DNA from: Octopus sinensis
Taxonomy: Eukaryota
Assembly: GCF_006345805.1 (NCBI RefSeq)
Contig: NC_043023.1
Location: forward strand, 18,910,001 to 18,974,000
DNA length: 64,000 nt
Direction of reading: 5' to 3'
The notes under the pieces: generated by a model
Databases searched by the model: none
What the model was told of the DNA's origin: nothing
Seen by the model: only the letters and a program-made list of their open reading frames with translations
Shown: positions 11,989 to 21,806 of the stretch, in pieces
Layout of the letters: each line of letters opens with the position of its first letter
Position numbering within the stretch: position 1 is the stretch's first letter
Translations under genes and position numbers: made by a program

Positions 11989-14900
11989 TCAAGAGAATGA
12001 TTTACCACAAATATCACAATGATATGGCTTCTCTCCTGTATGTGTAAGTTTGTGTCTAGACAAGTCCCCACTTTGAGAGAATGGTTTACCACAAATATCA
12101 CAATGATATGGCTTTTCTCCTGTATGTGTAAGTTTGTGTCTAGACAAGTCTCCACTTGGAGAGAATGATTTATCACAAATATCACAATGATATGGCTTTT
12201 CTCCTGTATGTGTACGTTTGTGTCTAGACAAGTCTCCACTTTGAGAGAATGATTTACTACAGATATCACAATGATATGGCTTTTCTCCAGTATGAATATG
12301 TTTGTGACGAGTCAAATGTTTACTTTCAGAGAATGGTTTACCACAAATATAACAATGATATGGCTTTTCTCCTGTATGTGTAAGTTTGTGTCTAGACAAG
12401 TCCCCACTTTGAGAGAATGGTTTACCACAAATATCACAATGATATGGCTTTTCTCCTGTATGTGTAAGTTTGTGTCTAGACAAGTCTCCACTTTGAGAGA
12501 ATGATTTATCACAAATATCACAATGATATGGCTTTTCTCCTGTATGTGTAAGTTTGTGTCTAGACAAGTCTCCACTTTGAGAGAATGATTTACTACAGAT
12601 ATCACAATGATATGGCTTTTCTCCAGTATGAATATGTTTGTGACGAGTCAAATGTTTACTTTCAGAGAATGGTTTACCACAAATATCACAATGATATGGC
12701 TTTTCTCCTGTATGTGTAAGTTTGTGTCTAGACAAGTCCCCACTTTGAGAGAATGGTTTACCACAAATATCACAATGATATGGCTTTTCTCCTGTATGTG
12801 TAAGTTTGTGTCTAGACAAGTCCCCACTTTGAGAGAATGATTTATCACAAATATCACAATGATATGGCTTCTCTCCTGTATGTGTAAGTTTGTGTCTAGA
12901 CAAGTCTCCACTTTGAGAGAATGATTTATCACAAATATCACAATGATATGGCTTTTCTCCTGTATGTGTAAGTTTGTGTCTAGACAAGTCTCCACTTTGA
13001 GAGAATGATTTACCACAAATATCACAATGATATGGCTTTTCTCCTGTATGTGTAAGTTTGTGTCTAGACAAGTCTCCACTTTGAGAGAATGATTTATCAC
13101 AAATATCACAATGATATGGCTTTTCTCCTGTATGTGTAAGTTTGTGTCTAGACAAGTCCCCACTTTGAGAGAATGATTTATCACAAATATCACAATGATA
13201 TGGCTTCTCTCCTGTATGTGTAAGTTTGTGTCTAGACAAGTCTCCACTTTGAGAGAATGGTTTATCACAAATATCACAATGATATGGCTTTTCTCCTGTA
13301 TGTGTAAGTTTGTGTCTAGACAAGCCTCCACTTTGAGAGAATGATTTATCACAAATATCACAATGATATGGCTTTTCTCCTGTATGTGTAAGTTTGTGTC
13401 TAGACAATTCTCCACTTTGAGAGAATGGTTTACCACAAATATCACAATGATATGGCTTTTCTCCTGTATGTGTAAGTTTGTGTCTAGACAAGTCTCCACT
13501 TTGAGAGAATGATTTATCACAAATATCACAATGATATGGCTTTTTCCTGTATGTGTAAGTTTGTGTCTAGACAAGTCTCCACTTTGAGAGAATGATTTAT
13601 CACAAATATCACAATGATATGGCTTTTCTCCTGTATGTGTAAGTTTGTGTCTAGACAAGTCTCCACTTTGAGAGAATGATTTATCACAAATATCACAATG
13701 ATATGGCTTTTCTCCTGTATGTGTAAGTTTGTGTCTAGACAAGTCCCCACTTTGAGAGAATGATTTATCACAAATATCACAATGATATGGCTTTTCTCCT
13801 GTATGTGTAAGTTTGTGTCTAGACAAGTCTCCACTTTGAGAGAATGGTTTACCACAAATATCACAATGATATGGCTTTTCTCCTGTATGTGTAAGTTTGT
13901 GTCTAGACAAGTCTCCACTTTGAGAGAATGATTTATCACAAATATCACAATAATATGGCTTTTCTCCTGTATGTGTAAGTTTGTGTCTAGACAAGTCTCC
14001 ACTTTGAGAGAATGATTTATCACAAATATCACAATGATATGGCTTTTCTCCTGTATGTGTAAGTTTGTGTCTAGACAAGTCTCCACTTTGAGAGAATGAT
14101 GTATCACAAATATCACAATGATATGGCTTTTCTCCTGTATGTGTAAGTTTGTGTCTAGACAAGTCCCCACTTTGAGAGAATGGTTTACCACAAATATCAC
14201 AATGATATGGCTTTTCTCCTGTATGTGTAAGTTTGTGTCTAGACAAGTCTCCACTTTGAGAGAATGATTTATCACAAATATCACAATGATATGGCTTTTC
14301 TCCTGTATGTGTAAGTTTGTGTCTAGACAAGTCTCCACTTTGAGAGAATGATTTATCACAAATATCACAATGATATGGCTTTTCTCCTGTATGTGTAAGT
14401 TTGTGTCTAGACAAGTCTCCACTTTGAGAGAATGATTTATCACAAATATCACAATGATATGGCTTTTCTCCTGTATGTGTAAGTTTGTGTCTAGACAAGT
14501 CTCCACTTTGAGAGAATGATTTATCACAAATTTCACAATGATATGGCTTTTCTCCTGTATGTGTAAGTTTGTGTCTAGACAAGTCCCCACTTTGAGAGAA
14601 TGATTTACTACAGATATCACAATGATATGGCTTTTCTCCTGTATGTGTAAGTTTGTGTCTAGACAAGTCTCCACTTTGAGAGAATGATTTATCACAAATA
14701 TCACAATGATATGGCTTTTCTCCTGTATGTGTAAGTTTGTGTCTAGACAAGTCCCCACTTTGAGAGAATGATTTATCACAAAATCACAATGATATGGCTT
14801 TTCTCCTGTATGTGTAAGTTTGTGTCTAGACAAGTCCCCACTTTGAGAGAATGGTTTACCACAAATATCACAATGATATGGCTTTTCTCCTGTATGTGTA

Positions 14901-20900: not shown

Positions 20901-21806
20901 ACAAATATCACAATGATATGGCTTTACTTCTGTATGTGTAAGTTTGTGTCTAGACAAGTCCCCACTTTGAGAGAATGGTTTACCACAAATATCACAATGA
21001 TATGGCTTTTCTCCTGTATGTGTAAGTTTGTGTCTAGACAAGTCTCCACTTTGAGAGAATGATTTACCACAAATATCACAATGATATGGCTTTTCTCCTG
21101 TATGTGTAAGTTTGTGTCTAGACAAGTCCCCACTTTGAGAGAATGATTTACCACAAATATCACAATGATATGGCTTCTCTCCTGTATGTGTAAGTTTGTG
21201 TCTAGACAAGTCTCCACTTTGAGAGAATGATTTATCACAAATATCACAATGATATGGCTTTTCTCCCCTATGTGTAAGTTTGTGTCTAGACAAGTCTCCA
21301 CTTTGAGAGAATGGTTTACCACAAATATCACAATGATATGGCTTTTCTCCAGTATGAATATGTTTGTGACGAGTCAAATGTTTACTTTCAGAGAATGTTT
21401 TACCACAAATATCACAATGATATGGCTTCTCTCCTGTATGTGTACGTTTGTGTCTAGACAAGTCTCCACTTTGAGAGAATGATTTATCACAAATATCACA
21501 ATGATATGGCTTTTCTCCTGTATGTGTAAGTTTGTGTCTAGACAAGTCTCCACTTTGAGAGAATGGTTTACCACAAATATCACAATGATATGGCTTTTCT
21601 CCAGTATGAATATGTTTGTGACGAGTCAAATGTTTACTTTCAGAGAATGGTTTACCACAAATATCACAATGATATGGCTTCTCTCCTGTATGTGTACGTT
21701 TGTGTACAGTCAAGTGACCACTTTGAGAGAATGATTTACCACAGATATCACACTGATATGGTTTCTCTAATGCATCAGGGTTTTTGCGTTTAGTTAAATG
21801 ATTCAT
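11989..21806 (-). CDS. Giant tandem C2H2 zinc-finger protein (~116 fingers, finger-only, single coding exon), frameshifted in this assembly
   Basis: [22 protein letters not shown] at 21806, then 84-bp units [28 protein letters not shown]. About 20 small indels, mostly in T runs, split it among the ORF-track frames. Confidence 0.9.

What the first reader, a model, noticed from the sequence alone, without database searches (positions are those of the whole stretch)
11989..21806. A ~116-finger protein with one repeated recognition helix: candidate natural (GCA)n/(CAG)n repeat binder
Seen: more than 100 fingers carry the same helix QSGDLSR (-1 Q, +3 D, +6 R), and there is no effector domain. Established: by the C2H2 code R6/D3/Q-1 specifies 5'-GCA-3', and the engineered GCA module QSGDLRR differs at one non-contact position. 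Inference: this gene encodes a ~3,270-aa polymer reader able to coat CAG/CTG-type trinucleotide tracts or a GCA-periodic satellite (DNA or RNA), unlike the heterogeneous arrays of its two neighbours. No long GCA tract is present in this window, so any target lies elsewhere.
Basis: partly seen in the sequence, partly recalled or inferred. Interest (0 to 1): 0.88.

Follow-up and report, generated by a model that had tools for sequence, protein, structure and literature searches.

The report
Runaway zinc-finger repeat, not giant protein
One 84-base zinc-finger coding unit has been copied about 116 times head to tail inside a zinc-finger gene, but stop codons and frameshifts mean at most the first ~19 fingers can be translated, so this is a young coding-derived tandem repeat and not a 3,270-residue protein.

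Summary
The repeat is real in the sequence. There are 116 tandem 84-bp units on the minus strand (21689-11956), and 101 copies of the helix QSGDLSR can be read across the three frames.

It is not one reading frame. Nineteen units between 20177 and 13550 have frame-shifting lengths. Three internal units carry a substitution-made TGA at the second zinc-ligand Cys. Four units have the first ligand His changed to Tyr. Unit 116 carries a further TGA.

Duplicated higher-order blocks show 0 mismatches against 23 gap columns over about 4.7 kb. Most single-base indels are therefore probably long-read consensus errors. The TGA and His-to-Tyr variants recur in the same block context, so they are real mutations that were amplified.

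The coding strand has only two ATGs, the start at 21806 and an out-of-frame one at 21775, before the first finger. Only the 5' ORF can be translated: 552 aa, 19 finger units, 18 with intact ligands. Unit variation looks neutral (20 nonsynonymous to 7 synonymous).

Best reading: a young, unequal-crossover expansion of one finger module in a finger-only C2H2 gene that is decaying. The GCA assignment for the helix is sound, because engineered CAG binders use QSGDLTR, but binding by this product is untested. No related protein was found in the databases.

The parts
22006..22016 (-). Conserved polypyrimidine/CAG splice acceptor; the terminal exon would start at about 22005
   Evidence: The sequence CTCTATTTCAG| aligns with the same motif upstream of both + strand paralogues at 43843 and 60854. 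Upstream homology of 76% covers 21869-22120. All three frames carry stops between the acceptor and the fingers, in all three genes.
20148..21806 (-). The only translatable ORF: ATG at 21806, leader [16 protein letters not shown], 19 finger units (18 with intact Cys2His2 ligands) and a stop as assembled
   Evidence: Pfam scores 18 zf-C2H2 stretches and no other domain. The ORF holds 16 QSGDLSR helices; one of these is in unit 11, whose first ligand His is Tyr (SRYKLTH).
21690..21767 (-). Finger 1 (helix QSGHLTV), distinct from the amplified unit
11956..21689 (-). 116 tandem 84-bp finger-coding units. Helices in unit register: QSGDLSR 105, ESKHLTR 4, QSGGLSR 4, and QSGELSR, PSGDLSR and *SGDLSR once each
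13467..20177 (-). Central zone holding all 19 frame-breaking units (numbers 19, 20, 33, 37-39, 43, 44, 46, 48, 49, 53, 56, 62, 73, 74, 80, 83, 98) and the exact higher-order repeat blocks
   Evidence: Block comparisons of 16, 13, 12, 7 and 8 units show 0 mismatches and 23 gap columns.
20056..20058 (-). In-frame TGA replacing the second zinc-ligand Cys (unit 20, variant J)
19468..19470 (-). The same TGA in unit 27 (variant J, same I-J-B block context)
17458..17460 (-). The same TGA in unit 51 (variant J, same I-J-B block context)
11989..11991 (-).
11606..11955 (-). Remnant of the ancestral C-terminus: four diverged fingers ([28 protein letters not shown]) and TAA at 11608-11606. It is cut off from the array by the TGA and by a 1-bp deletion after finger 117
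61131..62471 (+). Paralogue with an intact 446-aa ORF and 15 heterogeneous fingers, used as the reference for the family's normal architecture
44112..45150 (+). Second paralogue; its ORF breaks after 7 fingers

Best explanation
This is the terminal exon of a finger-only C2H2 zinc-finger gene in a ZNF cluster. One 84-bp finger module, probably first a 3-finger 252-bp block, has recently been amplified to about 116 head-to-tail copies by unequal crossing-over or replication slippage.

Shown: the array now behaves as neutral tandem-repeat DNA, a coding-derived minisatellite grown to 9.8 kb. It carries nested higher-order repeats, edges that are more diverged than the centre, and inactivating variants that were themselves copied. 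Canonical translation can start only at the ATG at 21806. It ends after about 19 finger units (552 aa as assembled). The remaining ~97 units are untranslatable.

Inferred: most single-base deletions in the centre are long-read consensus errors rather than mutations; the mechanism is unequal exchange; the gene is decaying rather than encoding a working repeat reader.
For: 1. Tandem structure and higher-order periods are seen.
2. Blocks of 7 to 16 units recur with 0 mismatches but 23 gap columns over about 4.7 kb. The deletions recur at AAA, GG and TT runs on different unit backgrounds, and the first 18 and last 18 units are clean. This is the pattern expected from unpolished consensus errors.
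3. Variant J (TGA at the second Cys, plus D-to-G at helix +3) occurs three times and variant I (ligand His to Tyr) three times, always adjacent in the same block. They are real mutations that were amplified regardless of coding capacity.
4. Distinct substitution events among units are 20 nonsynonymous to 7 synonymous. The neutral expectation is 80.6% nonsynonymous (p=0.46). The events include two nonsense changes and one ligand loss.
5. Mean pairwise unit identity is 93.6% and 93.2% at the two edges against 96.9% in the centre.
6. Between 21806 and 11956 the coding strand has only two ATGs, the start codon and an out-of-frame one at 21775.
7. The ancestral C-terminal fingers and TAA survive out of frame beyond a TGA.
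8. No protein close to the 552-aa ORF appeared among the scored candidates of a 5.8-billion-protein search. Such a protein would have outscored every listed hit; the best identity listed was 61%. An exact look-up also found nothing.
Against: The 5' part is intact. The splice acceptor is conserved, the ATG aligns with the second Met of the paralogues' leader, and 18 ligand-intact fingers follow, so a shortened protein could still be made and used. If the indels are assembly errors, assembly quality is poor here, and copy number and block order may also be wrong. No reads, transcripts or orthologous locus were available. Neutral-looking variation among repeat units of one gene is a weak test, because the units are so young that few events exist.
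Confidence: 0.7

Rival explanations
1. One reading: an intact ~3,270-aa, ~116-finger protein that coats (GCA)n/(CAG)n tracts, with every disruption being an assembly error.
For: Most frameshifts do look like consensus errors, given 0 mismatches against 23 gap columns between duplicated blocks and deletions that fall mostly in homopolymer runs. The helix matches the engineered GCA/CAG-binding helices.
Against: Three internal TGA codons and four ligand His-to-Tyr changes are substitutions recurring in the same block context, which is not an error pattern. The junction of units 19 and 20 carries +4, +2 and -1 indels. The N:S ratio is neutral. Linkers are uniformly TGEKP, whereas PMC5013590 states that longer spacers every two fingers are essential for long arrays. 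A-to-I editing could in principle turn UGA into UGG (my knowledge of cephalopod editing, and the organism is unverified), but that would place Trp at a zinc-ligand position.
Confidence: 0.04
2. A working shortened protein: the 552-aa 5' ORF (19 finger units, 15 ligand-intact QSGDLSR fingers in runs of 2, 1, 5 and 7) is expressed and binds short (GCA)n/(CAG.CTG)n tracts. The rest of the array is 3' UTR or untranscribed.
For: The ATG, leader and acceptor are conserved with the paralogues. Pfam scores 18 intact fingers. The helix differs at +5 only from a helix used in engineered CAG binders of 11 fingers. An Asp after the second Cys also occurs in a solved natural finger of ZNF568.
Against: Within this ORF, unit 11 has lost a ligand His and the linker before unit 10 is TEVKP. 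The inter-His Arg of the ancestral-type unit (HKRTH) is Leu in the amplified unit. The ORF end is created by the same irregular junction as the rest of the decay. There is no expression evidence, no related protein in the databases and no GCA tract in the window.
Confidence: 0.13
3. Largely an assembly artefact: the real array is much shorter, or block order is wrong, because a noisy long-read assembler over-expanded or mis-joined identical higher-order blocks.
For: Duplicated blocks are identical at every substitution site and differ only by indel noise. That is what independent consensus passes over the same true sequence would also give.
Against: The array has an orderly nested structure with distinct, more diverged edges. 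The 5' and 3' 3-unit blocks (ESKHLTR - QSGDLSR - QSGDLSR) are related but not identical. Several different block periods coexist (7, 8, 24 and 26 units), as expected of real unequal exchange. This cannot be settled without reads.
Confidence: 0.13

Closest known systems
PRDM9 zinc-finger array, described as a 'coding minisatellite' (PMC3890296)
   Same: Both are tandem 84-bp finger-coding units in a terminal exon that turn over by copy-number change and unequal recombination, with a distinct first-position repeat.
   Different: In PRDM9, variation is concentrated at -1, +3 and +6 and the frame stays open. Here the contact positions are almost invariant, variation looks neutral, stops and ligand losses are present, the copy number is 116 units, and no PR/SET or KRAB domain is found.
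Engineered poly-zinc-finger CAG-repeat binders (ZF11xHunt / ZF-KOX1 / mZF-KRAB; PMC5013590)
   Same: Both are arrays of near-identical fingers with helix QSGDLTR/QSGDRKR aimed at CAG repeats. The natural helix QSGDLSR differs at +5 only. The GCA to QSGDLRR/QSGDLTR pairing appears in PMC5260015.
   Different: The engineered arrays have 11 fingers, longer spacers after every two fingers that the authors call essential, and a KRAB effector. The natural array has uniform TGEKP linkers, no effector and a broken frame. Binding was not tested.
Lineage-specific tandem C2H2 ZNF clusters of metazoans, including the cephalopod expansion (PMC10547256, PMC9795677; Albertin et al. 2015, recalled from memory)
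   Same: Clustered paralogous multi-finger genes, a finger array in one exon, rapid birth and death, and paralogues in the same window that are intact (61131-62471) or broken (44112-45150).
   Different: Ordinary family members have heterogeneous helices and roughly 7-15 fingers here. This copy has one helix repeated about 105 times. I recall that the 2015 octopus genome paper reported 70-90-bp tandem repeats enriched beside C2H2 genes. I could not retrieve that paper, so this is a lead and not a test.
Satellite or minisatellite DNA with higher-order repeats evolving by unequal crossing-over (general model, from established knowledge)
   Same: Head-to-tail units, nested higher-order periods, a homogenised centre with diverged edges, and spread of neutral or deleterious variants.
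   Different: The unit is a recognisable protein-coding module lying inside a gene with a conserved start and acceptor.

Membership tests
C2H2 zinc finger (Pfam PF00096 / PF13465) | C-x2-C-x12-H-x3-H ligand spacing with TGEKP-type linkers, scoring above the Pfam cut-off | tested here: met
   PF00096 scores 348 bits (cut-off 25.2) with 18 stretches, and PF13465 scores 523 bits, in the 552-aa ORF. The unit consensus is [28 protein letters not shown].
Intact protein-coding gene for a ~116-finger protein | One uninterrupted reading frame from the start codon to the stop across the whole array | tested here: not met
   There are 19 frame-shifting units, three internal substitution-made TGA codons and a further TGA in unit 116. 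Only two ATGs lie on the coding strand.
Intact protein-coding gene for a ~116-finger protein | Purifying selection, seen as a deficit of nonsynonymous change among units | tested here: not met
   Twenty nonsynonymous to 7 synonymous distinct events against 80.6% expected under neutrality, p=0.46. This is a weak test because the units are young.
PRDM9-type coding minisatellite | Tandem 84-bp finger units in one exon | tested here: met
   family description in PMC3890296
PRDM9-type coding minisatellite | Unit variation concentrated at contact positions -1, +3 and +6, with the frame kept open | tested here: not met
   Only 5 of 27 distinct events fall on -1 or +3, and none on +6. The frame is broken.
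PRDM9-type coding minisatellite | PR/SET (and KRAB/SSXRD) domains N-terminal to the fingers | tested here: not met
   No such Pfam family was found in the ORF. In-frame stops lie between the exon acceptor and the ATG. Upstream exons carrying such a domain in another frame or splice form cannot be fully excluded.
Engineered CAG-repeat poly-finger binders (ZFxHunt type) | Repeated recognition helix of the QSGDLxR type | tested here: met
   QSGDLSR compared with QSGDLTR (PMC5013590) and QSGDLRR for GCA (PMC5260015)
Engineered CAG-repeat poly-finger binders (ZFxHunt type) | Extended linkers after every two fingers, which keep long arrays in register | tested here: not met
   Linkers are TGEKP throughout, with isolated variants RGEKP and TEVKP. 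The requirement is stated in PMC5013590.
Engineered CAG-repeat poly-finger binders (ZFxHunt type) | Demonstrated binding to (CAG)n/(GCA)n DNA | not testable with these tools
   This needs EMSA, SELEX, protein-binding microarray or ChIP. Only a recognition-code inference is available.
KRAB / SCAN / BTB-type ZNF | An N-terminal effector domain | tested here: not met
   No such Pfam family was found. The CDS starts 13 residues before finger 1.
Tandem satellite or minisatellite DNA with higher-order repeats | Head-to-tail units, nested higher-order periodicity, and edges more diverged than the centre | tested here: met
   Block repeats occur at lags of 7, 8, 24, 26 and 50 units. Blocks show 0 mismatches. 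Mean pairwise identity is 93.6% and 93.2% at the edges against 96.9% in the centre.

The most novel reading that the evidence does not exclude
The 552-aa 5' ORF is expressed and is a natural sequence-specific reader of short (GCA)n/(CAG.CTG)n tracts. It has 19 finger units, 15 of them ligand-intact fingers with helix QSGDLSR, in runs of up to 7. That would make it an evolved counterpart of the engineered poly-finger CAG-repeat repressors, caught just after a minisatellite expansion created it.
Probability: 0.1. Interest if true: 0.65.

Novelty: new member of a known kind. Interest (0 to 1): 0.3.

Why it matters
As assembled, this is mainly a warning for annotators. A perfectly periodic finger array whose +1 frame has no stops produces many long overlapping ORFs, and it invites a 'giant protein' reading that the sequence does not support.

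Biologically it is a clear snapshot of how finger arrays grow and die. A single module is amplified to satellite scale by unequal exchange, and nonsense and ligand-loss variants are copied along with it.

If the short 5' product were shown to bind CAG/CTG-type repeats, it would be a rare natural analogue of designed repeat-binding fingers. It would then be useful for asking how far uniform canonical linkers can stay in register on DNA.

Tried and rejected
1. Protein database searches. The 552-aa ORF returned only generic vertebrate and invertebrate ZNFs of 61% identity or less. The 446-aa neighbour gave the same kind of result, 62% or less. The stop-free +1 frame of the unit was used as a specific probe for the same DNA called in another frame and found nothing. 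The top lists are swamped by long multi-finger proteins, so short near-identical fragments could have been missed.
2. Exact look-ups of the 552-aa and 446-aa ORFs in assemblies found nothing on record.
3. Identifying the organism failed. A TE-like ORF (5582-5965) has 679 relatives at 52% identity or less, and the eight best that I looked up are all unnamed. ARAGORN and Rfam found nothing in the window. Two strings from the SINE-like repeat matched no paper. My impression that this is an octopod genome rests on memory of the SINE-like element and the [11 protein letters not shown] finger style, and it is unverified.
4. AlphaFold2 on six fingers without an alignment gave a poor model (pLDDT 60.5, no helices). 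It is uninformative and was not taken to a fold search.
5. I considered the Gly-to-Asp change after the second Cys as evidence of decay and rejected it. A solved ZNF568 finger has C-x2-C-D-K.
6. I considered that the single-base deletions prove pseudogenisation and rejected that. The 0 mismatches against 23 gap columns point to consensus error. The case for decay rests on the substitutions.
7. The 2015 octopus genome paper could not be retrieved. 'QSGDLSR' occurs in no paper held in the library.
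Full report
WHAT IS IN THE SEQUENCE

Tandem Repeats Finder reports an 84-bp array from 11661 to 21768, with 120.5 copies, 94-95% matches and better-scoring 168- and 252-bp periods. It lies on the minus strand.

Walking the array with a consensus gives 116 successive units from 21689 to 11956. They are preceded by one distinct finger (helix QSGHLTV) and a 13-residue leader that starts at the ATG at 21806.

The unit consensus translates to [28 protein letters not shown]. 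This is a canonical C-x2-C-x12-H-x3-H finger with a TGEKP linker and helix positions -1 Q, +3 D and +6 R. The string QSGDLSR occurs 101 times as read, but spread over all three minus-strand frames: 35, 26 and 40. In unit register, 105 of 116 units encode it. The DNA-level observation is therefore real and far beyond chance.

IT IS NOT ONE READING FRAME

The mechanical ORF list already shows 14 overlapping ORFs in three frames.

- Nineteen units are not 84 bp long: fifteen of 83 bp and one each of 82, 85, 86 and 88 bp. All lie between 20177 and 13550. The first 18 and last 18 units are clean.
- The ORF from the ATG is 552 aa and stops at 20148-20150. Pfam finds 18 C2H2 stretches in it and no other domain.
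- The +1 frame of the consensus unit has no stop codon. After each shift a long finger-less ORF therefore opens, for example a 405-codon open stretch at 20105-18891. This explains the illusion of continuity.

ARE THE FRAMESHIFTS REAL?

Blocks of 16, 13, 12, 8 and 7 units recur at lags of 24, 26, 50, 8 and 7 units. Realigning the raw DNA of these block pairs gives 0 mismatches and 23 gap columns over about 4.7 kb.

The deletions recur at the same AAA, GG and TT runs on different unit backgrounds (73A five times, 50A four times, 7G twice). In the central 80 units there is essentially no private substitution, yet 19 units carry indels. Real mutation does not give indels without substitutions. I infer that most single-base indels are unpolished long-read consensus errors inside a repeat where short reads cannot be placed. 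This is an inference, because no reads were available. The junction of units 19 and 20, with +4, +2 and -1, is more complex and may be real.

WHAT REMAINS IF THE INDELS ARE FORGIVEN

Read in unit register, three units carry TGA in place of the second zinc-ligand Cys (CDI*GKPF): number 20 at 20058-20056, number 27 at 19470-19468 and number 51 at 17460-17458. All three are the same variant J, which also has D-to-G at helix +3. Each sits next to variant I, whose first ligand His is Tyr (SRYKLTH). Variant I occurs three times, and unit 11 carries the same change.

These are substitutions that recur in the same block context. They arose once and were copied by the amplification process. Amplification was therefore indifferent to coding capacity.

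Unit 116 has a further TGA at 11991-11989, two substitutions away from CAA. Behind it lie four diverged but recognisable fingers and a TAA at 11608-11606. This is the ancestral C-terminus, now also displaced by a 1-bp deletion.

Between 21806 and 11956 the coding strand contains only two ATGs: the start codon and an out-of-frame one at 21775. Nothing downstream of the first stop can be initiated canonically. Whichever way the indels are treated, the product is about 19-20 finger units long, not 116.

SELECTION AND AGE

Excluding the four older ESKHLTR units, there are 27 distinct substitution events among units. Twenty are nonsynonymous and 7 synonymous, against 80.6% nonsynonymous expected for random hits on the consensus (p=0.46). 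They include two nonsense changes and one ligand loss. Only five fall on -1 or +3 and none on +6. This is the opposite of the PRDM9 pattern, where variation concentrates at the contact residues (PMC3890296).

Mean pairwise unit identity is 93.6% and 93.2% at the two edges and 96.9% in the centre. This is the classical signature of an array homogenised by unequal exchange. The 3-unit block ESKHLTR-QSGDLSR-QSGDLSR appears twice at each end, which suggests an original 252-bp duplication before the single-helix units took over.

GENE CONTEXT

Two paralogous arrays lie on the + strand. One is an intact 446-aa ORF with 15 heterogeneous fingers (61131-62471). The other breaks after 7 fingers (44112-45150). 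They sit inside a 93.5%-identical segmental duplication.

All three genes share a conserved acceptor (…CTATTTCAG|) about 200-290 nt upstream of finger 1, and a homologous untranslated stretch with stops in every frame. The ATG at 21806 aligns with the second Met of the paralogues' leader.

No (GCA)n or (TGC)n tract of 3 or more units occurs in the window. GCAGCA and TGCTGC are absent from the array itself.

THE BINDING IDEA

The code assignment is reasonable. Published tables pair GCA with QSGDLRR and QSGDLTR (PMC5260015). The engineered CAG-repeat repressors use QSGDLTR/QSGDRKR (PMC5013590). The same paper states that longer spacers after every two fingers are essential for long arrays to function. 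Here all linkers are TGEKP.

The amplified unit has Leu where the ancestral-type unit has the inter-His Arg (HKLTH against HKRTH). From general knowledge of finger-DNA complexes, that Arg/Lys usually contacts the phosphate backbone.

The Asp after the second Cys is not disqualifying, because a solved ZNF568 finger has it.

A reduced hypothesis survives but is untested: the 552-aa product, with 15 ligand-intact QSGDLSR fingers in runs of up to 7, might bind short (GCA)n tracts.

EXTERNAL EVIDENCE

- A search of 5.8 billion proteins with the 552-aa ORF found nothing above 61% identity. A protein with a dozen or more of these fingers would have topped the list.
- The neighbour search, the +1-frame probe and the exact look-ups found no counterpart.
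- The string QSGDLSR is in no paper held in the library.
- The organism could not be established. The 36% GC content, the abundant microsatellites and the SINE-like repeat at 53.1-54.0 kb remind me of an octopod genome, but that is memory and not a test.
- Cephalopod and other metazoan ZNF expansions are documented (PMC9795677, PMC10547256). The 2015 octopus genome paper, which I recall reporting 70-90-bp tandem repeats beside C2H2 genes, could not be retrieved.

VERDICT

The best explanation (about 0.7) is a young, neutrally evolving tandem amplification of one finger module in a decaying finger-only ZNF gene, seen through an indel-noisy assembly.

Rival explanations:
- An intact giant gene: 0.04.
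- A functional ~19-finger GCA reader: 0.13.
- A copy-number or ordering artefact of assembly: 0.13. This one overlaps with the best explanation.

It is an extreme member of a known kind, namely coding minisatellite behaviour of finger arrays and birth-and-death in ZNF clusters. Interest is modest (0.3).

Noticed in passing
window 2903-4987: A 95-bp satellite of 22 copies with 97% matches, unrelated to the finger array.
   Followed up: no
window 1-1526: A 496-bp unit repeated 3.1 times (96% matches, 2% indels) that runs off the window start.
   Followed up: no
window 53162-54017; also 22643-22850, 54599-54807, 25299-25416: A SINE-like element of about 170 bp is present as five tandem copies plus dispersed copies at 81-90% identity; one copy lies about 0.8 kb upstream of the array gene's start codon. 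ARAGORN and Rfam call nothing, and no paper matched two strings from it. It resembles an octopod SINE from memory only.
   Followed up: partly
window 43001-46677 versus 60012-64000: A segmental duplication (93.5% identity over 2.2 kb, 106 mismatches and 25 gap openings) carries two + strand ZNF paralogues and a shared 162/323-bp downstream tandem repeat. The 61-kb copy has an intact 446-aa ORF; the 44-kb copy is broken after 7 fingers.
   Followed up: partly
window 5582-5965: A 127-aa ORF that looks transposon-derived.
   Followed up: partly
window 11956-21806, minus strand: The +1 frame of the 84-bp unit has no stop codon, and the coding strand has no ATG downstream of 21775. Mechanical ORF finders therefore return many long overlapping ORFs with TTG or GTG starts that are not genes.
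   Followed up: yes
window 34243-34682 and 36913-37280: Related AC/CT-microsatellite-flanked repeats of about 100-120 bp occur at two sites about 2.5 kb apart (95-100% matches).
   Followed up: no
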